Virus record (IMG/VR): IMGVR_UViG_3300044640_001495
Coordinates: 248,001 to 312,000 of that record
DNA: 64,000 nt
Direction: 5' to 3' (one strand)
Each line of letters opens with the position of its first letter. The first letter of the stretch is position 1. A program made the translations under genes and the position numbers. The notes beneath the pieces were generated by a model. It made no database searches and was not told the origin of the DNA. It saw only the letters and a list, made by a program, of their open reading frames with translations. Shown here piece by piece: positions 1 through 63,292 of this stretch.

Positions 1-150
1 GACATGGGCGAAATACATAGAGAATACGATCCTATCAGAATTTTACCTGATGAGCGAGTGAACAGAATAAATGAAAATATCATGTCAATGACAGACGACA
101 TAACTACACTAGTAGTAAATCACGTATTAGGAAAAAAAGATGACAGTTAA
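1..150 (+). CDS. 3' end of a truncated ORF, possibly a GT9/heptosyltransferase-like glycosyltransferase
   Basis: Frame 1 is open from base 1: DMGEIHREYDPIRILPDERVNRINENIMSMTDDITTLVVNHVLGKKDDS*, overlapping the next ATG. The family call rests on recalled similarity to GT tails preceding carbamoyltransferases in T4-like phages and is weak. Confidence 0.4.
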   Translation, partial: DMGEIHREYDPIRILPDERVNRINENIMSMTDDITTLVVNHVLGKKDDS

Positions 151-1969
151 AACCATATCAGCAAAAAAATCAAATAAACCCGTGTGGGTCGCAGCCATTG
201 CTCGCGGACATAATGCAGGCATCTGTCTACTAAAAGACGGAGAGATTGTATTTTCTATCGAAGAAGAAAGATTGAGTCGTCAAAAGTATGACGGCGGTCC
301 GCTTGCGTCAATGGTTAAGATTTTAGAATACACAGATAAGCTAGACTTTTTGGTTGTAGCACATACACAGAGTCTTGCAGATTCTTCGGGAAAAATTGAT
401 TATACCGGCGACGATATGTACACTGGCCTAGCTCGAAAGTTAGGACTAATTGATAGAAAAGTAGCTAACCTACACAAACATCCTCAGGTGATTGATCTCA
501 GTTTCATGCATCACAAGCTGCATGCTGCCTGCGCATTTTATCGTTCAGGTTGGGAAGATGCAGTTTCTTTGATTGTTGATGGTGCAGGCACATTCTATCA
601 AATGAGTTACAACGACCAACCACTGTGGGTATGGGAAGTTGAGTCTATTGTTGATTGTGCATATCCTGCAGATTTCAAAACTCTTTACAAAAATTACGGT
701 GCAAGAGATCCTATTGTTGGAACATTTCAAGCTGAATTTCCTTCTGCAAATTTAGGCGAGGATGGCGAAACACACGAAGCATGGGTTAGTGATCGTGCAG
801 GCATTGTCAAGGCCTACGAGGGAGTAACTGAATATTGTGGATTCTCAGCTATTGAAGCTGGAAAGACTATGGGATTATTTCCATACGGAAAAGCCAACAA
901 TAAAATTCCTCCGTTGTTTGATACAACATCTAAAATTCCGTTAACAAATAGAAACTTATTGGTGCCAAAATATCCAATGAGTAGCATGGTTAATTCACAA
1001 CTATTTGATTATATTGACGAATTTCCTGAAGATCCTAAAGGTGATGTTACCTACATGGACAATCGTAGAGATATGGCCTATGCTGTTCAGACACAGACGC
1101 AAGAACAGGTGGTAAGACTAATCAAATTAGCCGCAGAAAAAAGTGGAAAGAATCGTGTTGTTATTTCCGGAGGCTATGGATTAAACTGTGTTGCTAACTA
1201 TCATTATCTAGAAGAATTAAAAGATAGCGGCATTGAAATTTATGTTGAACCTATCAGCAATGATGCAGGTACAGCAATGGGCGCAGGTCTGCTGTTCTAT
1301 CATGGCATGTATGACGATACTACCATACGTAAATACGATACTTTGTATTATGGCCCTGTACACACTTATACCAGTGAAGAAATTGCTGCAAAGGCAGAAG
1401 CTGCTAATGCAGAAGTTACAGATGCTACAGCTAAAGACATTGTCAAGCTGTTACGTGAAAAAAACATTGTGACTATCTTCCAAGGACGTTCAGAAAACGG
1501 ACCACGTGCCCTAGGCAATCGTTCAGTGCTGTTTGATCCAACATTTGAAGACGGCAAAGACTATGTGAATGCAGTCAAGCATCGTGAATACTTCCGCCCA
1601 TTTGCGGGAAGTATTCTAGAAGAAGATGTACACGAGTGGTTTGATTTACGTGGAATGAAAAACAGTCCATTCATGATGTACGCTGTAAACTGCCAGCCAG
1701 GAGTTGAAGAAAAGATTCCAAGCATTATTCACGAAGATCATACCTGCCGTATTCAAACAGTTAATCCTGAGCAGAACAAGCACTACTATGATTTGATCAA
1801 AGCATTCAAAGATGAAACAGGCGTTCCTATCCTGTTTAATACCAGCTTTAATCTAGGTGGCGAACCCCTAGTAGAAACACTAGATGATGCTATTTGGACA
1901 TTACAAAAGTCAGAAATTGAATACCTGTACTTGCCCGAGTACAGTAAACTAATTAAAATTGCCAACTAA
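140..1969 (+). CDS. O-carbamoyltransferase, NodU/CmcH/TobZ family, full length (Kae1-like plus YrdC-like domains)
   Basis: Motifs EEERLSRQK, HHKLHAACAF, DGAG, SGGYGLNCVAN, NDAGTAMGA, GRSENGPRALGNRS, KHREYFRPFA, FNTSFNLGGEPLVET. Confidence 0.93.
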   Translation: MTVKTISAKKSNKPVWVAAIARGHNAGICLLKDGEIVFSIEEERLSRQKYDGGPLASMVKILEYTDKLDFLVVAHTQSLADSSGKIDYTGDDMYTGLARKLGLIDRKVANLHKHPQVIDLSFMHHKLHAACAFYRSGWEDAVSLIVDGAGTFYQMSYNDQPLWVWEVESIVDCAYPADFKTLYKNYGARDPIVGTFQAEFPSANLGEDGETHEAWVSDRAGIVKAYEGVTEYCGFSAIEAGKTMGLFPYGKANNKIPPLFDTTSKIPLTNRNLLVPKYPMSSMVNSQLFDYIDEFPEDPKGDVTYMDNRRDMAYAVQTQTQEQVVRLIKLAAEKSGKNRVVISGGYGLNCVANYHYLEELKDSGIEIYVEPISNDAGTAMGAGLLFYHGMYDDTTIRKYDTLYYGPVHTYTSEEIAAKAEAANAEVTDATAKDIVKLLREKNIVTIFQGRSENGPRALGNRSVLFDPTFEDGKDYVNAVKHREYFRPFAGSILEEDVHEWFDLRGMKNSPFMMYAVNCQPGVEEKIPSIIHEDHTCRIQTVNPEQNKHYYDLIKAFKDETGVPILFNTSFNLGGEPLVETLDDAIWTLQKSEIEYLYLPEYSKLIKIAN

Positions 1970-40018: not shown

Positions 40019-40826
40019 TCCAGTATTTTTCGTGGCGATTTACAATTAAATCACTCTTTGCGCTCTTACCGTAGTCTTTGCGTTTGCCCTTAAGGTGATC
40101 AAGGTATGCACCCCATGCACTATTGATTAAAGGATGGCCTTCACCTTTGAATAAACCTGCACTCCAGTCATACCATTGCCATTCTGGATGACGTTGTTTG
40201 ACTTCTTTCCTAACAATGTCAAAAACCCAACAGTCGTTCCACTCACTCATGGTAAACAGTCTGCCAGTGTCGTAGGCTTTTTGAAATTCAACAAGAAACT
40301 CTTGAGTGTTTTTGTCCTGCAAGTTCATGGAATACAAGCCGCATTCTGTAAACTTTTTCTCTCTACCTAAAAACCCTAGACCAATGTTAGAAGCAGCCAT
40401 TTTATCTATAAAGTGATGGGGAACAGGTGTATGACACACCATATCAGCATCCATCCAAAATAGTACATCGGCATCACAGTTTGCGGCAGCGTGGCACACT
40501 GAATAAATTTTATGGCTAAACCGGATAGCGTCCCAGCGGAATCCCACTCCAGGTGCTTTGCCTTTTCGATCAACAGGTCCAGTGGCTACAAGACCATTGG
40601 CCCTGGGGTCATTTTTCCACTTTTCTTTAAATGCTACTAGTGCAGGCACAGTGGCATGTAAATCTCTAACCACTAGATTAGGGGCAGACTCGGTTATTTC
40701 ACAGTCTTCTGGGTAGACATACAATGTAATATCTGATGGCCATGTTTTTAAAAATGTTTCAATCATTTTTCGGCCATATTTTTCATAACCAGCCTTGTGA
40801 AATGTAGTGACTACTGCTTTTTTCAT
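40002..40826 (-). CDS. GT-A glycosyltransferase-like protein (start ATG 40826, coupled to the gmd stop)
   Basis: WDAIRFSHK, FWMDAD, ECGLY, EWNDCWVFD, DHLKGKRK; paralogous to 39305-40018. Confidence 0.7.
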   Translation of the reverse strand: MKKAVVTTFHKAGYEKYGRKMIETFLKTWPSDITLYVYPEDCEITESAPNLVVRDLHATVPALVAFKEKWKNDPRANGLVATGPVDRKGKAPGVGFRWDAIRFSHKIYSVCHAAANCDADVLFWMDADMVCHTPVPHHFIDKMAASNIGLGFLGREKKFTECGLYSMNLQDKNTQEFLVEFQKAYDTGRLFTMSEWNDCWVFDIVRKEVKQRHPEWQWYDWSAGLFKGEGHPLINSAWGAYLDHLKGKRKDYGKSAKSDLIVNRHEKYWISSPG

Positions 40827-41836
40827 CTTGTTTGTAATGTCCAATCTGCACCTTGGTTGCCACCATATCGTTTAATGTCGGCGTCGACCATCATTTTAAC
40901 AAGAGCGTCAAAATCAGTCTTACGCTGCCAACCTAGCACTGATTCTGCCTTGGTAGGATTACCACATAGGCTGTGTAATTCAGCAGGACGTACAAATGCT
41001 GGATTAGTTTCAATATAATTTTGCCAATTGTCAATGCCAGCATACTTAAATGCACGTTCTAACAAATCGCCAATGGTATATTGCACACCTGTGGCGATCA
41101 CATAGTCGCCTGGCTCGGGCTGTTGCAACATCAACCACATGGCTTCCACAAAATCTCCGGCAAACCCCCAATCACGTTTGGCATCTAAATTTCCTAAGAC
41201 AATTTTATCTTGAAGGCCAAGTTTAATACGAGCAACACCGTCTGTGATTTTACGTGTGACAAATTCTTTGCCTCTAATAGGACTTTCATGATTAAACAAA
41301 ATACCGTTTGATGCATGTAGGCTATAACTTTCACGGAAGTTTACAGTCATCCAGTATGCATACAACTTAGCAACACCGTAAGGACTACGTGGCCAAAACG
41401 GAGTTTTTTCGTCTTGTTTTCCACCTGAAATTTCAATACTGTTGCCAAACATTTCACTAGTACTAGCTTGGTAATATTTGGTATCTGGACTATGTTGTTT
41501 GACAGCGTTAAGAATATTTAAAACTCCAACAGCATTGACCTCAGTGGTCATTTTATTAAGATCCCAACTGGCTCCGACAAAACTTTGAGCAGCAAGGTTA
41601 TAAAATTCGTTTGGTCTTAAACTCTTTACCAAATGATTCATACAACCGTCGTCTGTAATATCACCGGTAATTAACTCAATGTCGTTTTCAATTCCTAAGA
41701 ATTTGATATTATCCAAATTTGGATTTGAATATCGTTTGACCAGTCCGTAGACCTTGTAGTCTTTTTCTAAAAGTAGTTTGGCAAGGTAAGGACCATCTTG
41801 TCCTGTCATGCCTGTGACAAATGCAATTTTTTTCAT
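40823..41836 (-). CDS. gmd: GDP-mannose 4,6-dehydratase
   Basis: TGMTGQDG.YLA, NLAAQSFV, YQASTSEMFG, PRSPYGVAK, FNHES..RG..FVTRKI, LGNLDAKRDWG. Confidence 0.95.
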   Translation of the reverse strand: MKKIAFVTGMTGQDGPYLAKLLLEKDYKVYGLVKRYSNPNLDNIKFLGIENDIELITGDITDDGCMNHLVKSLRPNEFYNLAAQSFVGASWDLNKMTTEVNAVGVLNILNAVKQHSPDTKYYQASTSEMFGNSIEISGGKQDEKTPFWPRSPYGVAKLYAYWMTVNFRESYSLHASNGILFNHESPIRGKEFVTRKITDGVARIKLGLQDKIVLGNLDAKRDWGFAGDFVEAMWLMLQQPEPGDYVIATGVQYTIGDLLERAFKYAGIDNWQNYIETNPAFVRPAELHSLCGNPTKAESVLGWQRKTDFDALVKMMVDADIKRYGGNQGADWTLQTR

Positions 41837-48107: not shown

Positions 48108-48352
48108 TTTATAAGAAAAGAAAAGAAGAAGCAAGCGCACCACCTGTAGAAGACGAAGAAGTAGAGTTAGCACACAACGAAGAACATATATCTAGAGACG
48201 ATATAGACATTGAGATAGTGATTGCGGAAGATTCCGACGATGTATTTGTAAAATTTACGGGGTTCAATGATCGCGAAGATTCTGAAGAGTATGCACAGTT
48301 TCTAGCAGATACATTGCCTTTGCTATTGTTTGAAACCACGAGATTGAACTAA
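48104..48352 (+). CDS. small acidic hypothetical protein
   Basis: Translationally coupled on both sides. Confidence 0.65.
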   Translation: MIYKKRKEEASAPPVEDEEVELAHNEEHISRDDIDIEIVIAEDSDDVFVKFTGFNDREDSEEYAQFLADTLPLLLFETTRLN

Positions 48353-48930
48353 TGCCGGATATTGACATAGACTTTGTAGACCGCGATCAAGCATTAAAAT
48401 TGTTTGAACACATCCCTGCCAGTAGACTAGACAATCAACGATTGGTCAAGCATAACACAGGTGTATATCTACACGCTGTTCCTGTAGATGCAGTTAGTGG
48501 TCTATGTCAACTTCCCTATGAACAGGCAGAAGAAGAAAAGTATTTTAAAATAGATTTTCTCAATGTTGGAATTTATAAAGGTGTTCGTGATGAAGAACAT
48601 CTAGTTTATCTAATGAATCAGGAGCCACTATGGGACTTACTTCAACAAGACGAATTTGTAAATCTGTTATTTCATTTGAACGGGCATGGAGATATAATCC
48701 GGAAGACCCTACCGACTTCCGTGGAACAATTATCTGCCGTCCTAGCTATGATCCGCCCAGCCAAACGTTATCTGATTGGGAAGCCTTGGACGACGATCAT
48801 GACGGAAGTATGGACCAAGCCAGAGACTGGTGATTACTACTTTAAGAAGAGTCATGCCACTGCCTATGCTGTTGCTATCGTTGTACAGATGAATTTAATC
48901 TGTGAACAGATTAGTTATGGATTCCAATGA
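48352..48930 (+). CDS. miniature family-C (DnaE / Pol III alpha) polymerase core
   Basis: PDIDID, KHNTGVY, FKIDFLN, LAMIRP, YYFKKSHATAYA occur in DnaE order within 192 aa. Confidence 0.8.
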   Translation: MPDIDIDFVDRDQALKLFEHIPASRLDNQRLVKHNTGVYLHAVPVDAVSGLCQLPYEQAEEEKYFKIDFLNVGIYKGVRDEEHLVYLMNQEPLWDLLQQDEFVNLLFHLNGHGDIIRKTLPTSVEQLSAVLAMIRPAKRYLIGKPWTTIMTEVWTKPETGDYYFKKSHATAYAVAIVVQMNLICEQISYGFQ

Positions 48931-49487
48931 ACTTTGATGCCTTTAGCAGTGCTCAGATACAGAGCAAGATTTGGCTCGTGGATCGATTAGAGCGTACACT
49001 TGAAGAACATAGACCTATTGAGGACGGTTATCGTATATGGATTTTAGCGGGATGGTATGCCTTGGCTAATTTTTTAATCCGTACTAGAAATAAAATACCT
49101 GTGCTGGAGGTCCGTAGCTTTGACCAAGATCCCGCATGTGAACCTATAGCAGAGGCCATCAACAATCTATGGGTCTATCGAGCTTGGGAATTCAAGGCAC
49201 ATACCGTTGACATCAATCTGTTGGAATATAAACCAAGACCAGATGTGATTATAAATTCCAGTGTTGAGCACATGACTTCGAGTCAATGGTACGCAAATAT
49301 CCCAGCGGGCACAGTGGTATGTCTACAGGCCAGCGATATGCTAGATGAGGATCATGTTAATTCTATGTCCAGTATCAAGGACCTAATGCTAAAGTACCCC
49401 ATGAGCGAACAGCTCTACGATGGCATTAAAAGATTTGAATTTGAAGACAAGGCCTTTAATCGAGTAATGATTATTGGCATCAAGTAG
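48927..49487 (+). CDS. class I SAM-methyltransferase-like protein, substrate unknown
   Basis: ILAGWY (motif I-like), RSFDQD, DVIINSSVEH. Confidence 0.6.
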   Translation: MNFDAFSSAQIQSKIWLVDRLERTLEEHRPIEDGYRIWILAGWYALANFLIRTRNKIPVLEVRSFDQDPACEPIAEAINNLWVYRAWEFKAHTVDINLLEYKPRPDVIINSSVEHMTSSQWYANIPAGTVVCLQASDMLDEDHVNSMSSIKDLMLKYPMSEQLYDGIKRFEFEDKAFNRVMIIGIK

Positions 49488-49851
49488 CCCGTCTAACCAA
49501 TGTGATTGATTTGCGCTTGATACGTTTTACAATGATATTATTAAGGCTGGTACAGGGACCAAATAACACCTTGACATCTTTGGTTGAAAAGTTTTTGATG
49601 GTGTATCGGAAAGCATAAATTTCTTTAAGTAAAAATATATTAATAGGAATCTGTCTATTTGATTCCCACCACCAAACTTCTCCTAGTTCTAAGAATTTTG
49701 CTTTTTCTTCTTCAGTTTTGATGTGTGCATAGTCATACATGCTGGTGATAGCAGAATCTTGGTTGATTATGATACCCACATATTCCTGATCAACGTGGGT
49801 TACAACACTGATAAAAGGAAAGTTTTCTTGTAAGTTATGTGTGATTCTCAT
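49480..49851 (-). CDS. hypothetical protein
   Basis: Protein-like (LGEVWWWESNRQIPINIFL); divergent from 49881. Confidence 0.65.
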   Translation of the reverse strand: MRITHNLQENFPFISVVTHVDQEYVGIIINQDSAITSMYDYAHIKTEEEKAKFLELGEVWWWESNRQIPINIFLLKEIYAFRYTIKNFSTKDVKVLFGPCTSLNNIIVKRIKRKSITLVRRAT

Positions 49852-49880
49852 AGATAAATAGTGTAAAGGTCCGCTAGTGT

Positions 49881-50693
49881 ATGCAACTTATTTCAGTTTA
49901 TTTATATCCAAACAAGATAGACGTATTTACAAATACGTTAGCCGCCTGGCAAACAGAGAGGTATCGTAGAGTGTATAATCGCAACTTAAAAATCCATCGA
50001 GGTGTCGATAACAGAATAGACCTGCAGGTGCGTAATTCTGACCAGAAGGCCCAAGACATAACAGGATCATATCTAGTTTTCAATCTAGTGAATAGAGAAT
50101 CTAAAGAACTCATACTGCAAAAGGATTGTGTAATTCAGAGTGCGTCGAGCGGCAAGGCATATGTTATTTTATACAATTCGGAATTGAGAGACATCGAACC
50201 TGGCTTTTATCAATACTCTGTAAACACCGAGACACGAACGCTTGATGGTGATGCACATGTGACCACGGCTAAAAACTCCTTGTATATAGATAGTCAGTAT
50301 GGCGCATTTAGCCCCATAGAAATCACTGGGGATGTATTCGGAGAACCAGTTGATAGTCTAGTAATAAAAGAATTTAAAAATTATCAACCTTACGACCCCG
50401 GCACATCATTATACTATATCAGTGGTATTATTGATGCACAACCCCAGTACGGTACTCCGCAGAGTCTGCATACATTCCAAATCAACATGTCCAATTACAT
50501 TGGCGATATCATCATTCAGGGCAGTCAAAGTGCAGGCGGAAATCCTGAACGCTGGGTTGATCTAGAAACTATAAGTGCCATGCAGGATCCTGTTCTTTAT
50601 CAAAACATCACTGGCAAATTCAATTGGTTTAGAATCAAATATATTCCGGATTTATCAAACACAGGAAAAGTTGACAGCGTACTATATAGATAG
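49881..50693 (+). CDS. hypothetical beta-sandwich protein, possibly structural
   Basis: Late promoter GATAAATA at 49853-49860; Ig/jelly-roll-like strand pattern. Confidence 0.55.
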   Translation: MQLISVYLYPNKIDVFTNTLAAWQTERYRRVYNRNLKIHRGVDNRIDLQVRNSDQKAQDITGSYLVFNLVNRESKELILQKDCVIQSASSGKAYVILYNSELRDIEPGFYQYSVNTETRTLDGDAHVTTAKNSLYIDSQYGAFSPIEITGDVFGEPVDSLVIKEFKNYQPYDPGTSLYYISGIIDAQPQYGTPQSLHTFQINMSNYIGDIIIQGSQSAGGNPERWVDLETISAMQDPVLYQNITGKFNWFRIKYIPDLSNTGKVDSVLYR

Positions 50694-50699
50694 TATACT
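50671..50699 (+). promoter_or_regulatory. sigma70-type promoter TTGACA-N17-TATACT, 6 nt before the primase ATG
   Basis: Near-perfect boxes; no SD. Confidence 0.8.
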
Positions 50700-50705
50700 G
50701 TATGT

Positions 50706-51728
50706 ATGACTCTTGTTCTTGATAAGTTTAGAACTCTCCTTCCTTCAAAATTAAAGACCAGTCCCAGCGGCTGGATTAGTTTCAATGCTCCTTGCTGTCA
50801 GCATAGAGGTCATGCACACGACACTAGAAAGCGTGGCGGTATTATTATTACAGACAGTGTTGTCTATAATTGTTTCAATTGCAAATATTCTACAGGTTGG
50901 AAACCCGGCTCCCCAATCACTGCTAAATTTAAAAGTCTTTGTCAATGGTTAGGCGCCAATGACGACGATATCAAGCAGTTGATATTTGAAGCGATGAAAA
51001 CCGAATCTACAGAATATCAACCAGAAGCATTTGTAGAAAAACCCACATTCACAGAAAAGCCCTTGCCCGAAGGTGCATTACCTTTAATTGAATGGTTGGA
51101 TTCTCAATTGACTGATGTTCAAGAACAACAGTTGATCAAGGCGGTAGAATATGTGGTAGGTAGAGGCTACGATCCGTTGAGCGATCACTTCTTCTGGAGT
51201 CCAGAAGCAGGCTATGCAGATCGTGTCATCATTGCTTTCAAATATCTTGGAAAAATTGTAGGCAACACAGCACGTAAAGTCACAGACGGAAAGCCCAAGT
51301 ATTTGTCCGATCAACATCCATTCTTTGTGTTCAACGTTGACGAACAATGTGAGGCACATAGATATCTGTTTGTGGTAGAAGGCCCATTTGACGCTATCAG
51401 CGTCGGCGGGGTGGCCTTGCTCACTAATGAAATCTCCGACCAACAGGCTCGGATAATTAACAGTATAGGCAAAGAAGTGATTGTGATCCCAGATCAAGAT
51501 AAAGCAGGCACGTTTCTAATAGATCAAGCTAAAGAACTAGGTTGGTCAATTGCATTTCCAACTTGGGATGACTCTGTGAAAGATTGTGCAGACGCTGTGA
51601 AAAAATATGGCAAACTATTTGTTGTTGTTGATGCTATAAAAACAGCAACGGCAAATCCTGCAAAGATTGAAATTGAAAAAAGAAAGATGCTAAACAAGAT
51701 AGCAGTATTGGAGAATCAAAATGATTAA
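50706..51728 (+). CDS. DNA primase, DnaG/T4 gp61-like
   Basis: Zn finger CCQH..CFNC; TOPRIM VEGPFDA and PDQD; KDCAD. Confidence 0.88.
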   Translation: MTLVLDKFRTLLPSKLKTSPSGWISFNAPCCQHRGHAHDTRKRGGIIITDSVVYNCFNCKYSTGWKPGSPITAKFKSLCQWLGANDDDIKQLIFEAMKTESTEYQPEAFVEKPTFTEKPLPEGALPLIEWLDSQLTDVQEQQLIKAVEYVVGRGYDPLSDHFFWSPEAGYADRVIIAFKYLGKIVGNTARKVTDGKPKYLSDQHPFFVFNVDEQCEAHRYLFVVEGPFDAISVGGVALLTNEISDQQARIINSIGKEVIVIPDQDKAGTFLIDQAKELGWSIAFPTWDDSVKDCADAVKKYGKLFVVVDAIKTATANPAKIEIEKRKMLNKIAVLENQND

Positions 51729-51837
51729 AAAAATATTAGATTTTATTTTATATCCGTGGCACAAGTATCAAGAACGCAAGGCATGGAAAAAACGTTTAGA
51801 AGAATTGCGTAAACGTGATCCATTTATCTACAAATGA
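51721..51837 (+). CDS. 38-aa peptide ending KRDPFIYK (absent from the ORF track)
   Basis: MIKKILDFILYPWHKYQERKAWKKRLEELRKRDPFIYK*; GGAGA SD upstream; ATGA overlap with the carbamoyltransferase start. Confidence 0.75.
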   Translation: MIKKILDFILYPWHKYQERKAWKKRLEELRKRDPFIYK

Positions 51838-52775
51838 TCATGTGGGGGGTAAATGCCCTTAATCATGGAAGTAGTCTTGCTGTATTCAAGGACGGCAGTC
51901 TGTGGTCCAATCAAGTGGGTTCTTCGGATGAATTAGACAGCAAAATAATTACCGATGCCCTGCATCTTGGAGCACCAGATCGTATCTTTTGGTACGAACG
52001 ACCCTGGATAAAGAAAGCAAGACAGGCATACGCAGGACAGTGGCATCGTGCCTTAGATATGAAGGTACTTCCACGTAGATATATGAAAGCGCAACATTAT
52101 GCTCCGATCACTTATACACCGCATCATGGTAGTCATGCAGCCGCAGGCTACTATACCAGTCCTTTTAATCATTGTGCTATTGTGGTACTCGACGCCATAG
52201 GTGAATTTGAATGTGCTACCATATGGGAAGGCCTACACGGAGAAATGCGCAAAGTGTGGAGCAGAAGTTATCCTAATAGTCTAGGGCTATTCTATAGCGC
52301 ATTTACTAACTTGTTAGGAATGACTCCAATACAAGACGAATATCTATTGCAACAAATGGCTAAGAAGGGCGACCCACATCGTTATAAACATGATGTTCAC
52401 AAATACATGAGCGGACTATTAATCTCTGGTAAGAACATGCACAAGGGCATCCTCGATTGGCCGCATGACATTGGAAATGAACAAGACCGTTACGATATTG
52501 CTGCCGCAGTTCAACGAGTGTTTGAAGATCAAATCCGTATGGTTATGCTAGAAGCTAAGAAATTAGTCAACACTGACTGTCTAGTTTATATGGGCGGTTG
52601 TGCTATGAATTCAGATGCTAATAAACGATTTGTGGAACCTGCATTTAAGTACAGGTGGAGTTTACCTAATCCAGGAGATCCATCTAGTTCTATCGGAGCA
52701 GTCTTGTATCACACTAAACAACGAGAGTGGAAATACAACTTTGGTGTTGCAAAGCACCTAGCAATTAGTGTATAA
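51834..52775 (+). CDS. carbamoyltransferase, Kae1-like N-terminal domain only
   Basis: NHGSS, HHGSHAAAGYYTSPF, LDAIGE, SLGLFY, MGGCAMN, PGDPSSSIGA; no GPRALG/YrdC-like domain follows. Confidence 0.85.
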   Translation: MIMWGVNALNHGSSLAVFKDGSLWSNQVGSSDELDSKIITDALHLGAPDRIFWYERPWIKKARQAYAGQWHRALDMKVLPRRYMKAQHYAPITYTPHHGSHAAAGYYTSPFNHCAIVVLDAIGEFECATIWEGLHGEMRKVWSRSYPNSLGLFYSAFTNLLGMTPIQDEYLLQQMAKKGDPHRYKHDVHKYMSGLLISGKNMHKGILDWPHDIGNEQDRYDIAAAVQRVFEDQIRMVMLEAKKLVNTDCLVYMGGCAMNSDANKRFVEPAFKYRWSLPNPGDPSSSIGAVLYHTKQREWKYNFGVAKHLAISV

Positions 52776-52776
52776 T
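52747..52776 (+). promoter_or_regulatory. sigma70-type promoter TTGCAA-N18-TATAAT, 7 nt before the ATG
   Basis: Perfect -10, weaker -35. Confidence 0.55.
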
Positions 52777-52783
52777 AAAATAT

Positions 52784-53401
52784 ATGTTTTATTATAATAA
52801 GAAATATCAAACAGGTGATCAATGGCTAATTGATACAGAATATACCAAGTATCAAGACCTATTGCCACTGGTTGAATCAAATCCCAATACTGAATACAGC
52901 AACGAAACTGTGGCGTTTAATGCTAGACAGTACCCATTGTGGAGTGATCCTGTGGTTGCACAGACAGTGAGACACAAACAATTTCTTGATAACTATGTTC
53001 AACACCCCGCTTGGGAAGAAGCAACACATGGTATATTCGAATGGACCAAGCGACGATTAAAAAGAAATAAAATTGACCTAAATTTTGTGCCAACTATTTC
53101 ATGGAGCATGGAATATGCCGCAGGCGGCTGGCAAAGCATGCATACACACGACAACGATTGTGTTACACAGATATTCTATTTAGATGGAGAAATAAACCAA
53201 GACCCAAATGTTAGTGCAAAAGAAAATGCATGGGGGTCTATGTATGCTTTTTTAACTAAAGGCGATAAACCATTATACAAATCATTTAGCAGTTGGGCAG
53301 GCCGTTGCATAATACTTCGTGGCGATATTTTCCACGGTGTTTATCCTATAAAAACATTGCCACGCAGAACAATTATTATGGATTATAAAGTGATACGATG
53401 A
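52784..53401 (+). CDS. 2OG-Fe(II) oxygenase superfamily protein
   Basis: WSMEYAAGGWQSMHTHD, IFYL, FHGVYP, RRTIIMD (HxD/H...H...R). Confidence 0.75.
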   Translation: MFYYNKKYQTGDQWLIDTEYTKYQDLLPLVESNPNTEYSNETVAFNARQYPLWSDPVVAQTVRHKQFLDNYVQHPAWEEATHGIFEWTKRRLKRNKIDLNFVPTISWSMEYAAGGWQSMHTHDNDCVTQIFYLDGEINQDPNVSAKENAWGSMYAFLTKGDKPLYKSFSSWAGRCIILRGDIFHGVYPIKTLPRRTIIMDYKVIR

Positions 53402-54834
53402 TAAAGACCTACGACTACGAAGTACAAAAATTATATCTTGAACTCATGCTGGCAGATGCCGAAGTATTTGTGCGCTGCCAAGGTATATTTGATCATTCAT
53501 TGTTTGACCGAAAACTACAGGATGCAGCAGAATTTATTCATGAATATGCCAAGGGCTATAATGTACTGCCAGACTATGAAATGGTCAATGCATCGTGCCG
53601 CACTGATATGAAACGTCCAGAAGATCTTAAAGAAGGTCACATGGACTGGTTCATGGATGAGTTTGAGAAGTTTACTCAACACAAGGCTCTTGAACGTGCA
53701 ATTATACAATCAGCTGATCTATTAGAAAAACATGACTATGGTGCAGTGGAAGTATTAATTAAAGAAGCTGTACAGATTGGACTTGCCCGAGATATGGGCA
53801 CAGACTACTTTGCTGATCCTCGTGGCCGATTGATGGGCATCAAAGACAAGAATGGACAGGTGAGCACAGGTTGGCCCTGTATGGATCGTAAGTTATTTGG
53901 TGGATTTAATCGTGGTGAACTAAACATCTTTGCCGGTGGATCCGGCGCAGGTAAAAGTTTGTTCTTGGCTAACTTGGGTGTGAACTGGGCATTGATGGGT
54001 CTTAATGTGGTCTATCTAACTCTTGAACTTTCAGAAGCACTGGTCAGTATGCGTATTGATGCAATGATAACAGGAACATCAACTAAAGACATTTTTAAAG
54101 ATCTAGATGATGTTGAAATGAAAGTTAAAATGATCGGCAAGAAGTCGGGCATGCTACAGATAAAATACATGCCCTCAGGCAAGACTGCCAACGACATTCG
54201 TGCATACCTGAAAGAATATGAAATTAAAGTAGGCAAAAAAGTAGACGTACTGTTAGTTGACTACTTAGACTTGTTAATGCCTGTAAGTAAAAAGATCAGC
54301 CCGGCTGACTTATTCATCAAAGACAAGTATGTGTCAGAAGAACTTCGTAATCTAGCAGTGGAGAAGAACTGTGTGTTCGTTACTGCGGCACAGTTAAATC
54401 GTGGTGCTGTAGAAGAAGTTGAATTTGATCACAGTCACATCTCGGGTGGTTTGAGCAAGATTCAAACGGCAGATAATGTGTTTGGTATCTTTACCAGTCG
54501 AGCTATGCGTGAACGTGGTCGCTATCAATTGCAGTTGATGAAGACACGGTCAAGTAGTGGGGTAGGCATGAAGATTGATCTAGAGTTCAATCTAGAAAGT
54601 TTAAGAATCAGTGACCTACCCGAGGACGAACAAGAAAATAACGGTGCAACAAGCAGAGGTAGTTCTAGTATAATTGAGTCAATCAAGGCTCGTAGTACTA
54701 TTCAAGGACGCATCGATGAAGATGGTGTTATACAAGATCCAACTCAAGGTGTTGGTCTAGGCAAGGTTCGTGCCAATGTTGAATCAAGTAAGATGCGTGA
54801 GATTTTAAACAAGCAGTTTGGCGATGAAGACTAA
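53398..54834 (+). CDS. replicative DnaB-like helicase, T4 gp41-like
   Basis: GGSGAGKS, LTLELSE, VDYLDL, TAAQLNR, ADNVF, MKTRSS. Confidence 0.93.
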   Translation: MIKTYDYEVQKLYLELMLADAEVFVRCQGIFDHSLFDRKLQDAAEFIHEYAKGYNVLPDYEMVNASCRTDMKRPEDLKEGHMDWFMDEFEKFTQHKALERAIIQSADLLEKHDYGAVEVLIKEAVQIGLARDMGTDYFADPRGRLMGIKDKNGQVSTGWPCMDRKLFGGFNRGELNIFAGGSGAGKSLFLANLGVNWALMGLNVVYLTLELSEALVSMRIDAMITGTSTKDIFKDLDDVEMKVKMIGKKSGMLQIKYMPSGKTANDIRAYLKEYEIKVGKKVDVLLVDYLDLLMPVSKKISPADLFIKDKYVSEELRNLAVEKNCVFVTAAQLNRGAVEEVEFDHSHISGGLSKIQTADNVFGIFTSRAMRERGRYQLQLMKTRSSSGVGMKIDLEFNLESLRISDLPEDEQENNGATSRGSSSIIESIKARSTIQGRIDEDGVIQDPTQGVGLGKVRANVESSKMREILNKQFGDED

Positions 54835-55774: not shown

Positions 55775-55905
55775 TCGATCTTATAACAGTCGTAGACATC
55801 CCAAGCGTATATAGAGTAAACTGAAAATCTCACAGCTTGCTCTAGTGTTGAGAATGTTTTAGATCTCAACTGCCCTGTGGCCAAATAGTATTTGAGTCGC
55901 CACAT
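55771..55905 (-). CDS. 44-aa hypothetical protein (absent from the ORF track)
   Basis: MWRLKYYLATGQLRSKTFSTLEQAVRFSVYSIYAWDVYDCYKID*; TAATG-coupled to the Bax-inhibitor gene; stop overlaps the NTase stop. Confidence 0.65.
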   Translation of the reverse strand: MWRLKYYLATGQLRSKTFSTLEQAVRFSVYSIYAWDVYDCYKID

Positions 55906-56600
55906 TAATCTTTCTTAATGCCAAACAACTGTAGTAGGTTGATAAACAGATTGATAAAGTCCATGTAGAGAGTTAATGCGCCCATAACTTCTTCACGACC
56001 TGTATCGCCATCTACTGAAACCATTTCACGAATCTTCTGTGTGTCGTAGGCAGTTAGACCCAGAAACACAATGATAGCAATAGCTGAGATCACCATCTGC
56101 ATCACTGTTGAACCAATAAAGATATTGATTATACTTGCAATGATGATAGCAATCAATCCCACAAACATGAACTTGCCCATGCTGTCAAGACTCTGTTTGG
56201 TAAAGTAGCCATAACCACTCATTACAGCAAACAGTATACCTGCTGACATAAATGCCGATACAATTGATCCCATGGTGAACACCGCAAAGATTGTGGCAAA
56301 GCTCAAACCCATTAGAGCCGCAAACGCATATAAAAATAGTTGTAGTTGCCCTTTATTAAAATGCTGGGCAGCAAAAGCAAATGCCAGGATGACTACCAAG
56401 GGTGAAAAAATCACAATCCATTTCATTGCACCCGTAAAAAAGAACTGCAACAATTCTGGGCTAGAGCCCACAAAGTAACTCACAATCATGCTTACAATAA
56501 CAGCAAGACTCATATGTCCGTAGACACGGCCCATTGCTGAGTTTACTTCTTCTGCTGAGCGGTAGTCTGTGATACCACCTGTATAATTTGTTCCAAACAT
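55905..56600 (-). CDS. Bax inhibitor-1 / YccA (TMBIM) family membrane protein
   Basis: About 7 hydrophobic helices; GLTAYDTQKI, ALTLYMDFINLFINLLQL; AGGAGG SD. Confidence 0.92.
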   Translation of the reverse strand: MFGTNYTGGITDYRSAEEVNSAMGRVYGHMSLAVIVSMIVSYFVGSSPELLQFFFTGAMKWIVIFSPLVVILAFAFAAQHFNKGQLQLFLYAFAALMGLSFATIFAVFTMGSIVSAFMSAGILFAVMSGYGYFTKQSLDSMGKFMFVGLIAIIIASIINIFIGSTVMQMVISAIAIIVFLGLTAYDTQKIREMVSVDGDTGREEVMGALTLYMDFINLFINLLQLFGIKKD

Positions 56601-62059: not shown

Positions 62060-62247
62060 TCTGATGCTGCCTCGTTGGCATATGATGCACCCAGGGCCAT
62101 AAAGCCTATGCCTACCAGTGCAAACAGGCCTAGGTATGCGCCATCGCCTGACAGTAGATCTGGGCTGGTTTCAATGCCGCCCACAACTCCTAACAGTAGC
62201 ACAATACCTGCGTACAGGAAAGATAAAGCCTTTTGTCTAGTAGTCAT
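62056..62247 (-). CDS. small two-helix membrane protein
   Basis: Two hydrophobic segments; AAAGGA SD downstream of an early promoter. Confidence 0.7.
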   Translation of the reverse strand: MTTRQKALSFLYAGIVLLLGVVGGIETSPDLLSGDGAYLGLFALVGIGFMALGASYANEAASE

Positions 62248-62273
62248 TTAGTGTCCTTTGTGTGTATGTAGTA

Positions 62274-62304
62274 ATTATACGGCAGTTTGGCTAATGTGTC
62301 AACC
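62274..62304 (-). promoter_or_regulatory. early sigma70 promoter GGTTGACA-N17-TATAAT
   Basis: Perfect consensus followed by ACATACACACA leader. Confidence 0.88.
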
Positions 62305-62305
62305 A

Positions 62306-62623
62306 TTATTTGGCAATACGCACGATCAAGCCCTGTGGCGTAGCTGCCACATTGTAGCCATTGCTTTCGAATAACTCAACGACCTCTTTAGCCATACGAT
62401 CTCTAGCTCTAGCACCTTCTGCTTTGACTGCTATGAACTTCTTGCGATAGTTGATGTAGAGACTTTTGTAGCTGAACGCTGAATCAAGTAGGTCTCTTAC
62501 TGAGAGAGCCTTGCGGATCTGATCTTGTGAATAGGTGCTCTTGTTGTTTGAGTTTTGACGCTGTGCATCCATTGCGGCTGCAAATGCAAACCCGCCTGCG
62601 TCTTTAGTATCTAGTTCTTTCAT
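62306..62623 (-). CDS. hypothetical early protein (start ATG 62623)
   Basis: AGGAG SD; promoter immediately upstream. Confidence 0.7.
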   Translation of the reverse strand: MKELDTKDAGGFAFAAAMDAQRQNSNNKSTYSQDQIRKALSVRDLLDSAFSYKSLYINYRKKFIAVKAEGARARDRMAKEVVELFESNGYNVAATPQGLIVRIAK

Positions 62624-62652
62624 TACTCGCTCCTGTTTGTGTGTATGTGTCA

Positions 62653-62683
62653 ATTATACTGCCAAAAAGCCTCGGTGTCAACC
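62653..62683 (-). promoter_or_regulatory. early sigma70 promoter GGTTGACA-N17-TATAAT
   Basis: Perfect consensus followed by ACACATACACACA leader. Confidence 0.88.
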
Positions 62684-62743
62684 TACGAAGTGCCCAGGCG
62701 TGTTGCAGGGTCTAGTGGTAGGCTGACACTTTGGCAACCCCTA

Positions 62744-63292
62744 TTAAGCCGCTTGTCTAGCCATATGGATCATTTCAACGCGGCCCATGTATGCGGTATT
62801 TACAACGCAGGGCTGAGTCTTAGAAGCAATCAGTGTACCTGAATTCTCTGTAAGATGAATCTCTGTTACACGGCAGGTGAAAGGATACAGTTTTTTGGTC
62901 TCGCGATAGTCTTCAGCGGCCATCTCTTTCTCACGTGGCAAATATTCATACACACGCAGTTTGACCTTGCGCTCTTGTCCGTTAGGAAAGGCACTGGCAA
63001 ATCCAGGGCCACGAGCACGTCTACGCACTGGATCTTTTGCGCCATCATTCTGTTCAAGTACCAAACGATTAAACGCATCGTGATCTGGAATGCCAGCTTC
63101 AACCATCGCAGCCTTGTCTTCTAGCATCTTGATGTAGTTGAGGAATCGTTTGGCTTTGACTTTGCCACCTGCGCCGTTGACATTATAGGTCTTGCCATCA
63201 ATTAACCATTCAGCCACAAAGGTCTTATATGGACGGGCATCGCGAAACAGTTCTTTAGCTTTGGCCAATGTCATAATAGGATGTGTTTTCAT
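62744..63292 (-). CDS. hypothetical early protein
   Basis: 182-aa ORF downstream of an early promoter. Confidence 0.7.
   Translation of the reverse strand: MKTHPIMTLAKAKELFRDARPYKTFVAEWLIDGKTYNVNGAGGKVKAKRFLNYIKMLEDKAAMVEAGIPDHDAFNRLVLEQNDGAKDPVRRRARGPGFASAFPNGQERKVKLRVYEYLPREKEMAAEDYRETKKLYPFTCRVTEIHLTENSGTLIASKTQPCVVNTAYMGRVEMIHMARQAA

What the first reader, a model, noticed from the sequence alone, without database searches (positions are those of the whole stretch)
48927..54834. Candidate replisome-embedded DNA hypermodification cassette: methyltransferase, oxygenase and half-carbamoyltransferase
Seen: primase -> 38-aa peptide -> Kae1-domain-only carbamoyltransferase with intact metal ligands (HHxxH, D, GD) -> 2OG-Fe(II) oxygenase -> helicase, tightly packed or overlapping and under sigma70-type promoters (pre-late timing). 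A SAM-MTase-like gene sits 2.3 kb upstream, coupled to the mini-DnaE. Established: 2OG oxygenases (TET/JBP) hydroxylate methyl-pyrimidines, and a phage carbamoyltransferase converts 5hmC to 5-carbamoyloxymethyl-C. Inference: a methyl -> hydroxymethyl -> carbamoyl route, or an unknown acyl transfer, at the fork. The missing YrdC-like domain implies a trans donor (ORF 140-1969, host TsaC, or another gene) or a different acyl-adenylate.
Basis: partly seen in the sequence, partly recalled or inferred. Interest (0 to 1): 0.75.

Follow-up and report, generated by a model that had tools for sequence, protein, structure and literature searches.

The report
Tail-peptide plus half carbamoyltransferase module
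The genes are real, but they do not form a DNA-hypermodification pathway: the conserved unit is an unannotated 38-residue peptide with an invariant DPFIYK tail paired with a carbamoyltransferase, inserted between primase and helicase of a lake jumbo phage, while the methyltransferase-like and oxygenase genes are variable passengers.

Summary
The 313-aa protein is a TobZ/NodU-type carbamoyltransferase that has only the Kae1-like domain, with all metal ligands intact. The 186-aa protein has a class I SAM-methyltransferase fold. The 205-aa protein is a divergent 2OG-FeII_Oxy_5 oxygenase.

The three do not behave as one cassette. In relatives the methyltransferase-like and oxygenase genes are usually absent from this locus. 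The 98%-complete genome has no ThyA-type hydroxymethylase, no TET/JBP and no C5 DNA methylase.

What is conserved is the 38-aa ORF plus the carbamoyltransferase.
- In 77 of 87 related loci, a small ORF ending in DP[FY][IL]Y plus one residue lies within about 6 kb of the enzyme gene, usually abutting it.
- A reverse scan for the motif alone found the enzyme in 99 of 119 loci.
- The pair occurs with half and full-length enzymes, in replisome and non-replisome contexts.
- A complex prediction (0.53, best control 0.01, weak support) places the PFIYK tail in the catalytic cleft.

The YrdC-like domain was lost at least three times.

The substrate is unproven. My best guess is the peptide's Tyr37.

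The parts
51721..51837 (+). 38-aa peptide with an invariant C-terminal DPFIYK tail. It is translationally coupled to the primase gene upstream and the carbamoyltransferase gene downstream.
   Evidence: Homologous small ORFs ending in DP[FY][IL]Y plus one residue lie within the fetched +/-6 kb of the enzyme gene in 77 of 87 loci, usually directly upstream. A motif-only scan of viral contigs gave 119 loci, 99 of them with the enzyme. In 152 distinct genes every synonymous codon is used while the residues stay fixed. The family is unnamed in Pfam, PHROGs and the ESM Atlas.
51834..52775 (+). Half carbamoyltransferase: the Kae1-like catalytic (acceptor-side) domain only, of the TobZ/NodU/NovN type.
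   Evidence: Carbam_trans_N scores 92 bits. The family profile hits NovN, GdmN and TobZ at 1e-44 to 1e-26, against Kae1/TsaD at 8e-6 and HypF at 7e-5. H11, H97, H98, H101, D120 and D282 are invariant. More than 120 metagenomic homologues of 311-316 aa share 73-96% identity. It lies in a half-type clade nested among full-length enzymes.
140..1969 (+). Full-length 609-aa carbamoyltransferase (Kae1-like plus YrdC-like domains), the candidate trans source of carbamoyl-AMP.
   Evidence: Carbam_trans_C at 2.9e-58 and Carbam_trans_N at 1.4e-25. It is the only Carbam_trans_C in the genome, which has no YrdC/Sua5 gene. Orthologues of 606-624 aa occur in 7 of 9 records with a half-type enzyme.
50706..51728 (+). 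DNA primase, the left flank of the insertion site.
   Evidence: Toprim_2 and phrog_47. In PA5oct the primase directly abuts DnaB.
53398..54834 (+). DnaB-like replicative helicase, the right flank of the insertion site.
   Evidence: DnaB_C and phrog_19 at 7e-72. It is 51% identical to the PA5oct helicase.
52784..53401 (+). Accessory Fe(II)/2OG oxygenase, a divergent 2OG-FeII_Oxy_5 member. It is a variable insert with its own promoter-like site.
   Evidence: HxH...H...R is conserved with the paralogues. The model has pLDDT 84.5, and its best PDB matches are PolD, ALKBH5 and PHD2. At this position it occurs only in the window, L006/7, L014, L020/21 and L196. An RNA contig skips it. Only 5 homologues were found in the word-based search.
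48927..49487 (+). Accessory gene with a class I SAM-methyltransferase fold and an atypical motif I. It is a variable insert.
   Evidence: The model has pLDDT 93 and matches TehB and small-molecule methyltransferases. It is absent at this place in L006, L007, L008 and most relatives. Distant homologues lie near peptide-enzyme modules in a few non-replisome loci (L076, L091/L192, L096, L122, L143).
48352..50693 (.). Conserved replication-block genes shared with PA5oct: mini-DnaE-like (48352-48930, +), a 123-aa gene (49480-49851, -) and a 270-aa gene (49881-50693, +).
   Evidence: phrog_11778, phrog_11637 and phrog_14467. The same order is seen in relatives and in PA5oct gp264-gp262.
52747..52776 (+). 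Sigma-70-like site (TTGCAA-18-TATAAT) directly before the oxygenase gene.
   Evidence: This is a consensus match only; such sites are not enriched in the region.

Best explanation
The locus is not a three-step DNA-modification pathway. It is a conserved two-gene module lodged at the primase/helicase junction of a freshwater PA5oct-like jumbo phage. The module is a 38-aa peptide with an invariant DPFIYK C-terminus plus a TobZ/NodU-type O-carbamoyltransferase. Two unrelated accessory genes sit beside it: a methyltransferase-fold protein and a 2OG-FeII_Oxy_5 oxygenase.

In this lineage the enzyme has lost its YrdC-like, carbamoyl-AMP-forming domain and keeps only the Kae1-like transfer domain.

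Inferred mechanism:
- Carbamoyl-AMP (or a related acyl-adenylate) is made in trans, most likely by the 609-aa full-length paralogue at window 140-1969.
- The half enzyme binds the peptide's C-terminal tail in its acceptor cleft.
- It transfers the carbamoyl group to that tail, most plausibly to the hydroxyl of the invariant penultimate Tyr37. This would resemble HypF acting on the C-terminal tail of HypE, or a peptide-derived (RiPP- or cofactor-like) product.

Shown here: the gene identities, the co-inheritance of peptide and enzyme, protein-level selection on the tail, repeated loss of the donor domain, co-occurrence with a second full-length enzyme, and the variability of the methyltransferase and oxygenase genes.

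Inferred only: binding, the acceptor atom, the trans donor, and the biological purpose.
For: Peptide-enzyme linkage:
- 77 of 87 enzyme-centred loci carry the peptide within the fetched +/-6 kb, usually directly upstream with an ATGA overlap. This holds for both half (~313 aa) and full-length (~475-497 aa) enzymes, in replisome and unrelated contexts, and includes an unannotated ORF in Ralstonia phage RsoM2USA.
- In the L013/L042/L084 clade the peptide lies downstream of the enzyme gene.
- In the reverse scan, 99 of 119 motif loci hold the enzyme.
- D, P and Y are invariant, F and I nearly so, across 152 distinct genes that use all synonymous codons.

Complex prediction: score 0.53 against a best control of 0.01, which the tool rates as 'weak support'. 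In its calibration the mark was reached by 58 of 80 solved complexes and 2 of 110 mismatched pairs. Only 7 of those 80 solved complexes, and both mismatches that passed, scored 0.60 or under.
- Peptide residues 34-38 touch enzyme residues 10-11, 64-72, 121-122, 152-166 and 202-205.
- Of these, Q69, I122, S155, A156, H203 and G205 are invariant or nearly so in peptide-linked enzymes, but differ in the 609-aa paralogue and mostly in the peptide-less cyanophage enzyme.
- In the one clade where the last peptide residue is Asp instead of Lys, contact residue 64 is Arg/Lys instead of Gln. This is a single event.

Donor-domain loss happened at least 3 times, with catalytic residues kept. A second full-length enzyme is present in 7 of 9 half-type records but only 1 of 19 full-type records.

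The module is an insertion: PA5oct has primase directly next to DnaB.

The accessory genes vary between relatives.
Against: - No experiment exists, and the phage is uncultured.
- The complex score is in the range the tool calls weak, and it may echo solved HypF-HypE complexes.
- O-carbamoyl-tyrosine on a peptide has no precedent that I know of.
- The half-type records with a second enzyme all descend from one loss event. The other two loss clades are on contigs too short to test.
- TobZ channels carbamoyl-AMP internally, so trans supply is an assumption.
- In some subfamilies another gene (DUF6071, a methyltransferase or others) separates the peptide from the enzyme. Nine of the 80 viral enzyme loci show no peptide within 6 kb.
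- Neighbours in non-replisome loci (radical SAM, UDP-glucose dehydrogenase, nucleotidyltransferase, HAD) would also fit a sugar or small-molecule acceptor.
Confidence: 0.42

Rival explanations
1. The peptide is an obligate partner but not the acceptor: an adaptor, activator, or pseudosubstrate regulator that occupies the cleft. The enzyme carbamoylates a sugar, sugar nucleotide, glycan or other small molecule, as NodU, NolO, TobZ, NovN and GdmN do.
For: The closest solved relatives are natural-product O-carbamoyltransferases. In non-replisome loci the module sits among radical SAM, UDP-glucose dehydrogenase, nucleotidyltransferase, HAD, methyltransferase and DUF6071 (GDSL/SGNH-like) genes. The window itself carries a GDP-mannose 4,6-dehydratase at 40823-41836. 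The genomic linkage and the predicted binding are explained equally well.
Against: The tail's penultimate Tyr is invariant and sits at a fixed distance from the C-terminus. The tail is predicted to occupy the acceptor cleft itself. This genome has no DUF6071 gene and no sugar genes adjacent to the module.
Confidence: 0.25
2. One reading: the half enzyme carbamoylates hydroxymethyl-pyrimidines in nascent or single-stranded DNA, or in nucleotides, at the replication fork. The hydroxymethyl group comes from an oxygenase acting on a methylated base.
For: A phage carbamoyltransferase that converts 5hmC to 5-carbamoyloxymethyl-C and prefers ssDNA is published (PMC8670742). The gene's place between primase and helicase is kept across many lake phages. 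The genome has six or seven 2OG oxygenase paralogues of unknown function. RNA-library contigs cover the region.
Against: The 98%-complete genome has no Thymidylat_synt-family hydroxymethylase, no Tet_JBP and no C5 DNA methylase. ThyA homologues occur in only 3 of 27 related records, and in none of the complete genomes G000, G002 and G012. The oxygenase and methyltransferase-fold genes are not conserved partners. The methyltransferase fold resembles small-molecule enzymes and has no DNA-recognition domain. PA5oct lacks the module. The same module occurs far from replication genes. The model gives the peptide no role.
Confidence: 0.12
3. The 38-aa ORF is a cis-acting leader or ribosome-arrest peptide, in the manner of TnaC, SpeFL or SecM. 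Its conserved C-terminus stalls the ribosome to control translation of the coupled enzyme gene.
For: Conservation is concentrated in the last ~17 residues, which are basic and followed by D-P. The N-terminus varies in sequence and length (27-66 aa). The stop codon overlaps the next start codon in most loci.
Against: In the L013/L042/L084 clade the peptide gene lies downstream of the enzyme gene. In many loci another gene separates them. The tail is predicted to dock on family-specific invariant residues of the enzyme, while the controls score 0.01 or less.
Confidence: 0.07
4. The half enzyme is a decaying remnant or a non-catalytic structural protein, or a TsaD-like t6A enzyme serving the phage's 32 tRNAs.
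For: The donor domain is missing. Split or frame-shifted versions exist in L099 and L176. The genome encodes 32 tRNAs.
Against: The half-type clade sampled in the tree (30 rows, down to about 48% identity to the window protein) keeps every catalytic residue, and lengths stay at about 290-340 aa. The profile matches O-carbamoyltransferases 20-38 orders of magnitude better than Kae1/TsaD.
Confidence: 0.05

Closest known systems
TobZ / NovN / GdmN / NodU-CmcH O-carbamoyltransferases (Pfam Carbam_trans_N + Carbam_trans_C)
   Same: The Kae1-like transfer domain with the HHxxH, D and D metal site. These are the best sequence matches among solved structures (1e-44 to 1e-26).
   Different: Here the YrdC-like carbamoyl-AMP-forming domain is absent. 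The enzyme is compact, and it is coupled to a dedicated small peptide that none of the known enzymes has, to my knowledge.
Phage 5-hydroxymethylcytosine carbamoyltransferase (Yang et al., eLife 2021, PMC8670742)
   Same: A phage-encoded member of the same superfamily. Its preference for ssDNA would suit a replisome location.
   Different: That enzyme is a 63-kDa two-domain protein defined by co-occurrence with a thymidylate-synthase-like hydroxymethylase. This genome has none, and only 3 of 27 related records do. The two sequences were not compared directly.
HypF-HypE (hydrogenase maturation)
   Same: A YrdC-like plus Kae1-like carbamoyltransferase that transfers carbamoyl to the flexible C-terminal tail of a protein acceptor. 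The peptide tail here is predicted to enter the Kae1-like cleft.
   Different: The HypE acceptor residue is a C-terminal Cys of a 35-kDa enzyme; here it would be a penultimate Tyr of a 38-aa peptide. Sequence similarity to HypF is marginal (7e-5).
TsaC/TsaD (t6A synthesis), as a model for split donor and acceptor halves
   Same: The adenylate made by a YrdC-type protein is used by a separate Kae1-type protein. That is the arrangement proposed here between the 609-aa and 313-aa enzymes.
   Different: The half enzyme is not a TsaD orthologue (8e-6 against 1e-44 for O-carbamoyltransferases). The proposed donor is itself a complete two-domain enzyme.
Peptide-derived cofactors and RiPPs with an invariant C-terminal Tyr (MftA/mycofactocin, PqqA/PQQ)
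   Same: A very short precursor with a variable N-terminus and an invariant C-terminal motif containing Tyr, encoded next to its tailoring enzyme. Radical SAM/SPASM, methyltransferase and sugar genes accompany the module in some phages.
   Different: No radical SAM gene is adjacent in this window. There is no sequence similarity to MftA or PqqA. Carbamoylation is not part of those pathways. The comparison rests on my own knowledge and was not tested.
Pseudomonas phage PA5oct (Arenbergviridae) replication block
   Same: The same gene order: mini-DnaE-like, a small minus-strand gene, a structural-protein homologue, primase, DnaB. The helicase is 51% identical.
   Different: In PA5oct the primase abuts DnaB directly, with no peptide, carbamoyltransferase, oxygenase or methyltransferase-fold gene.

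Membership tests
TobZ/NodU-type O-carbamoyltransferase | Kae1-like N-terminal domain (Carbam_trans_N) above Pfam's cut-off | tested here: met
   92 bits against a cut-off of 24. The family profile matches NovN, GdmN and TobZ at 1e-44 to 1e-26.
TobZ/NodU-type O-carbamoyltransferase | Metal-binding residues (HHxxH, Asp, Asp) | tested here: met
   H97, H98, H101, D120 and D282 are invariant in 41- and 77-sequence alignments.
TobZ/NodU-type O-carbamoyltransferase | YrdC-like C-terminal domain (Carbam_trans_C) that makes carbamoyl-AMP | tested here: not met
   There is no Carbam_trans_C in the 313-aa protein or next to it. The only copy in the genome is in ORF 140-1969.
TobZ/NodU-type O-carbamoyltransferase | Carbamoyl transfer from carbamoyl-AMP to a hydroxyl acceptor | not testable with these tools
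   Needs an enzyme assay.
Phage 5hmC carbamoyltransferase system (PMC8670742) | Co-occurrence with a thymidylate-synthase-family dCMP hydroxymethylase | tested here: not met
   No PF00303 match in the 98%-complete genome. Only 3 of 27 related records have one.
Phage 5hmC carbamoyltransferase system (PMC8670742) | Two-domain (N + C) enzyme | tested here: not met
   N domain only.
Phage 5hmC carbamoyltransferase system (PMC8670742) | Activity on 5hmC in ssDNA or on 5hmdCTP; modified bases in virion DNA | not testable with these tools
   The public runs are held only as assembled contigs, with no raw signal.
TET/JBP dioxygenases (for the 205-aa protein) | Match to Tet_JBP | tested here: not met
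   No PF12851 match anywhere in the genome at E <= 0.1. The top structural matches are PolD, ALKBH5, PHD2 and P4H.
2OG-FeII_Oxy_5 (PF13759) | Score above Pfam's cut-off | tested here: not met
   21.3 bits against 27.
2OG-FeII_Oxy_5 (PF13759) | Jelly-roll fold with the family's HxH...H metal residues and the 2OG-binding Arg | tested here: met
   H120, H122, H184 and R195 are invariant with five paralogues that score above or near the cut-off. The model has pLDDT 84.5 and a 2OG-oxygenase fold.
DNA cytosine-C5 methyltransferase (for the 186-aa protein) | Match to DNA_methylase and a target-recognition domain | tested here: not met
   No PF00145 match in the genome. The 186-aa single-domain model resembles TehB and small-molecule methyltransferases.
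Class I SAM-dependent methyltransferase fold | Rossmann-like seven-strand fold | tested here: met
   Foldseek E 2e-9, TM 0.6-0.65, to many SAM- or SAH-bound methyltransferases. Motif I is atypical (AGWY in place of GxGxG), and SAM binding was not tested.
HypF-HypE-like tail carbamoylation | The acceptor's C-terminal tail enters the Kae1-like active site | tested here: inconclusive
   Predicted complex scores 0.53 against a best control of 0.01, rated 'weak support'. The tail touches residues lining the cleft.
RiPP or peptide-derived cofactor precursor | Short peptide with a conserved core, encoded beside its tailoring enzyme | tested here: met
RiPP or peptide-derived cofactor precursor | Dedicated maturase (for example radical SAM/SPASM) or protease in the same cluster | tested here: not met
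   None is adjacent in the window; the nearest radical SAM gene is about 32 kb away. One is present beside the module in RsoM2USA, L013 and L059.
TsaD/Kae1 (t6A) | Best family match is TsaD/Kae1 | tested here: not met
   8e-6 against 1e-44 for O-carbamoyltransferases.

The most novel reading that the evidence does not exclude
Lake phages, and Ralstonia phage RsoM2USA, encode a previously unrecognised system. A ribosomally made ~38-aa peptide is O-carbamoylated on the penultimate Tyr of its invariant DPFIYK tail by a dedicated TobZ-type carbamoyltransferase. The result would be either a carbamoylated peptide effector or an activated aryl-carbamate carrier that passes the group on, for example to the DUF6071/SGNH proteins that often sit between the two genes. 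In the window's lineage the enzyme has split functionally into a donor (the 609-aa paralogue) and an acceptor-side half.
Probability: 0.3. Interest if true: 0.8.

Novelty: new variant of a known kind. Interest (0 to 1): 0.6.

Why it matters
This result prevents a wrong annotation: gene adjacency to the replisome here does not indicate a DNA-hypermodification pathway.

It also brings out a small unnamed gene family (no name in Pfam, PHROGs or the ESM Atlas; no paper found for its recurrent neighbour family DUF6071). That family is the most faithful partner of a phage carbamoyltransferase clade found in hundreds of environmental contigs and in one cultured phage, where the ORF is unannotated.

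The repeated loss of the adenylate-forming domain, with the catalytic half kept, is a natural experiment on whether TobZ-type enzymes can work with a donor supplied in trans.

If the peptide is the acceptor, this would be the first phage peptide carbamoylation system and a new tyrosine modification. The test is simple: three small genes, carbamoyl phosphate, ATP and a mass spectrometer.

Tried and rejected
- megablast of the 6-kb region against cultured phages found no match.
- tblastn of the oxygenase and of the peptide against cultured phages found no match. The RsoM2USA peptide was found only by a regex on the fetched locus.
It was re-sent with the window's proteins and search-result proteins only.
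- The oxygenase has only 5 homologues in the word-based search, so its model rests on a 13-row alignment.
- Testing whether the other half-type clades also carry a second full-length enzyme failed. All 20 records are 1-11% complete and show no Carbam_trans_C.
- DUF6071, which recurs beside the module elsewhere, is absent from this genome. No paper mentions it.
- The literature search for carbamoyltransferase plus jumbo phage gave nothing relevant.
- The genome search reported a 693-aa 'open frame' over the primase-enzyme region. Translation shows three stop codons in that frame between the two genes, so this is not a fusion or a recoding.
- The public runs are held only as contigs, so base-modification signals could not be examined.
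- The published 5hmC carbamoyltransferase sequence was not compared directly, because that would have meant typing in a long external sequence.

Full report
**What the window is.** The window is bases 248001-312000 of a 353-kb IMG/VR virus record that CheckV rates 98% complete. Near-identical sequence is held by many lake-water metagenomes. The helicase is 51% identical to that of the jumbo phage Pseudomonas phage PA5oct (Arenbergviridae). PA5oct shares the local gene order. No cultured phage matches the region at the DNA level.

**The observation.**
- Mini-DnaE-like gene, 48352-48930.
- A 186-aa gene, 48927-49487, overlapping the stop of the mini-DnaE-like gene.
- A 123-aa minus-strand gene and a 270-aa gene.
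- Primase, 50706-51728.
- A 38-aa ORF, 51721-51837.
- A 313-aa Carbam_trans_N-only protein, 51834-52775.
- A 205-aa weak 2OG-FeII_Oxy_5 protein, 52784-53401.
- DnaB, 53398-54834.

The enzyme's HHxxH, D and D ligands are invariant across relatives.

The 186-aa protein has no family hit. Its model (pLDDT 93) is a class I SAM-methyltransferase fold, closest to TehB and to small-molecule or protein methyltransferases, with no DNA-recognition domain.

The 205-aa protein keeps the HxH...H...R residues shared with the genome's clearer 2OG-FeII_Oxy_5 paralogues. Its model (pLDDT 84.5) matches PolD, ALKBH5, PHD2, P4H and ABH2, not TET/JBP.

Sigma-70-like sites are not enriched: 24 found against 26.2 expected. 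Good matches do precede the primase and the oxygenase.

**Is it a cassette?** Relatives say no.
- In contigs whose half enzyme is 78-79% identical, the 186-aa gene is missing. The oxygenase is either present (L006/L007) or absent with the enzyme gene abutting DnaB (L008).
- Across 80 viral loci found with an enzyme alignment, and 119 found with a motif scan, the oxygenase sits between the enzyme and DnaB only in the window's nearest kin. The 186-aa gene does so in a handful of loci.
- A metatranscriptome contig joins 52777 to 53398, which is a variant lacking the oxygenase.
- The genome holds six or seven 2OG-FeII_Oxy_5 genes scattered elsewhere.
- It has no Tet_JBP, no C5 DNA methylase, no thymidylate-synthase-family enzyme and no YrdC/Sua5 gene.
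- The published phage 5hmC carbamoyltransferase is a two-domain enzyme identified through its co-occurrence with a thymidylate-synthase homologue. In unmodified contigs, carbamoyltransferases had unrelated neighbours (PMC8670742).
- Among 27 related records only three carry a ThyA homologue. The complete genomes G002 and G012 do not, and neither does G000.
- In PA5oct the primase directly abuts DnaB. Everything between them here is therefore an insertion at a junction that tolerates accessory genes.

**What is conserved.** The 38-aa ORF is the conserved partner.
- A regex on the fetched loci showed the same kind of small ORF next to a 55%-identical half enzyme (L010), a 48%-identical one (L012) and a 46%-identical one in a radical-SAM/HAD/nucleotidyltransferase context, where it lies downstream (L013). 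It also appears as an unannotated ORF upstream of the full-length enzyme gp199 of Ralstonia phage RsoM2USA.
- Of 87 enzyme-centred loci, 77 carry a peptide ending in DP[FY][IL]Y plus one residue within the fetched +/-6 kb, usually overlapping the enzyme's start codon.
- The reverse test scanned IMG/VR for a back-translated R-D-P-F-I-Y-K-stop. Each motif hit lies at the end of a small ORF of this kind, and 99 of the 119 loci analysed contain the enzyme. Only five loci with at least 2.5 kb of downstream sequence lack it.
- The alignment shows a variable N-terminus, a basic helix-like stretch, and D, P, F and Y invariant.
- Across 152 distinct genes every synonymous codon is used at these positions. 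Selection is therefore acting on the peptide.
- The family has no name in Pfam, PHROGs or the ESM Atlas.

**How peptide and enzyme may work together.** One complex prediction was run, using the enzyme with an alignment of search-derived homologues and the window peptide alone.
- It scored 0.53 (three runs: 0.51-0.58). Three controls scored 0.01 or less. The tool rates this 'weak support'.
- In the tool's calibration the mark was reached by 58 of 80 solved complexes and 2 of 110 mismatches. Scores of 0.60 or under were reached by only 7 of the solved complexes and by both false passes.
- The confident contacts are peptide residues 34-38 against enzyme residues 10-11, 64, 67, 69, 72, 121-122, 152, 155-156, 159, 165-166 and 202-205.
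- Several of these (Q69, I122, S155, A156, H203, G205) are invariant or nearly so in peptide-linked enzymes. They differ in the window's 609-aa paralogue and mostly in a peptide-less cyanophage enzyme. The universal catalytic residues are shared by all.
- In the single clade whose peptides end in Asp rather than Lys, contact residue 64 is Arg/Lys rather than Gln. This is one event, so it is only suggestive.

Together with the genomic linkage, this makes the tail a likely ligand of the acceptor cleft. The invariant penultimate Tyr is the obvious hydroxyl for an O-carbamoyltransferase. That step is inference.

**The missing domain.** The nearest relatives at 35-45% identity are a mix of ~290-340-aa and ~475-505-aa proteins.
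- A maximum-likelihood tree of 75 N-domains needs at least three losses of the C-terminal domain: a well-supported clade of 30 half enzymes that includes the window; L013; and L074/L087/L093, which are nested among full-length enzymes in the same replisome position.
- Split or frame-shifted intermediates occur in L099 and L176.
- Seven of nine records holding a half enzyme of the window's clade also hold a 606-624-aa full-length enzyme orthologous to window 140-1969. These are G000-G004, G006 and G008. The two without one are 16-19% complete.
- Only 1 of 19 records with a full-length peptide-linked enzyme holds a second Carbam_trans_C. G005 (92% complete), G012 (100%) and G019 (82%) each have only their own.
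It reflects a single loss event, however, and the other loss clades sit on contigs too short to test.

**Context elsewhere.** Outside the replisome context the module keeps company with these genes:
- DUF6071 (GDSL/SGNH-like), often between the peptide and the enzyme, and present in three copies in RsoM2USA;
- radical SAM enzymes;
- UDP-glucose dehydrogenase;
- a nucleotidyltransferase;
- HAD phosphatases;
- several kinds of methyltransferase.

This neighbourhood looks like tailoring chemistry on a peptide, sugar or small molecule, not DNA metabolism. DUF6071 is absent from this genome.

**Expression.** Contigs from lake metatranscriptome libraries cover the region, including pieces spanning the primase end, the peptide ORF and the enzyme's start. 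DNA carry-over cannot be excluded.

**Verdict.** The trans-donor inference gains support. The DNA-hypermodification pathway and the three-enzyme cassette are not supported. The most likely reading (about 0.4) is a peptide-carbamoyltransferase module in which the half enzyme acts on, or through, the DPFIYK tail using an adenylate made by the 609-aa paralogue. The main rival (about 0.25) keeps the partnership but puts the carbamoyl group on a sugar-like acceptor. DNA modification remains possible (about 0.1) and is cheap to test alongside.

Noticed in passing
L004:6038-6148 (Ralstonia phage RsoM2USA, MG752970.1, between RsoM2USA_201 and _200): An unannotated 36-aa ORF ending in DPFIYK lies upstream of a DUF6071 gene and the full-length carbamoyltransferase gp199, next to two more DUF6071 genes and a radical SAM gene. 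This gives a cultured phage in which the module could be tested.
   Followed up: partly
G000:C1:58125-66330 (outside the window): The genome encodes 32 tRNAs, 29 of them in one array. Two 2OG-FeII_Oxy_5 paralogues (62213-62830 and 65528-66100) sit inside that array, which hints at an RNA-related role for this oxygenase family.
   Followed up: no
G000 and relatives G002, G005, G012, G019 (whole records): These jumbo phages carry unusually many radical SAM genes: about 9 matches in G000, 21 in G005, 13 in G019. In G005 and G019, clusters of them lie within about 15 kb of the peptide-carbamoyltransferase module.
   Followed up: no
L099:958-2321 and L176:1310-2776: The carbamoyltransferase N and C domains lie in adjacent, separate frames. 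These could be split genes, frameshifts or assembly errors, and may be intermediates of the domain loss.
   Followed up: no
window 52777/53398 (RNA run X19): One metatranscriptome contig joins the end of the carbamoyltransferase gene to the DnaB start, with 5 other letters between them. This is a natural variant without the oxygenase gene.
   Followed up: partly
L008:8616-9155 and the unnamed place: In relatives lacking the oxygenase between the enzyme and DnaB, a different 179-aa 2OG-FeII_Oxy_5-like gene sits after DnaB and an 80-aa gene. Further paralogues lie a few kb on, so these oxygenases shuffle around the block.
   Followed up: no
window 40823-41836 (-) and 40002-40844 (-): A GDP-mannose 4,6-dehydratase (E 8e-117) with an adjacent 280-aa gene of unknown family. 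This is sugar-nucleotide metabolism about 10 kb upstream of the module.
   Followed up: no
window 55905-56600 (-): A Bax1-I (BI-1/YccA-like) membrane protein gene (E 7e-52), also present in relatives.
   Followed up: no
window 3096-9557 (+): A 2153-aa ORF lies about 1.1 kb downstream of the 609-aa full-length carbamoyltransferase, separated from it by two small ORFs with no Pfam hit (153 and 187 aa).
   Followed up: no
window 49881-50693 (+): The 270-aa gene inside the replication block matches a PHROG of virion structural proteins. Its positional counterpart in PA5oct (gp262) was detected in virions by mass spectrometry according to the record.
   Followed up: no
L033:5261-6001 and L132:6261-6896: Other methyltransferases, one with an NPPH motif and an MTS/N6_Mtase match, occupy the gap between the peptide and the enzyme in some relatives. 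Together with the 186-aa family near some non-replisome modules, methyltransferases of several kinds recur beside the module.
   Followed up: partly
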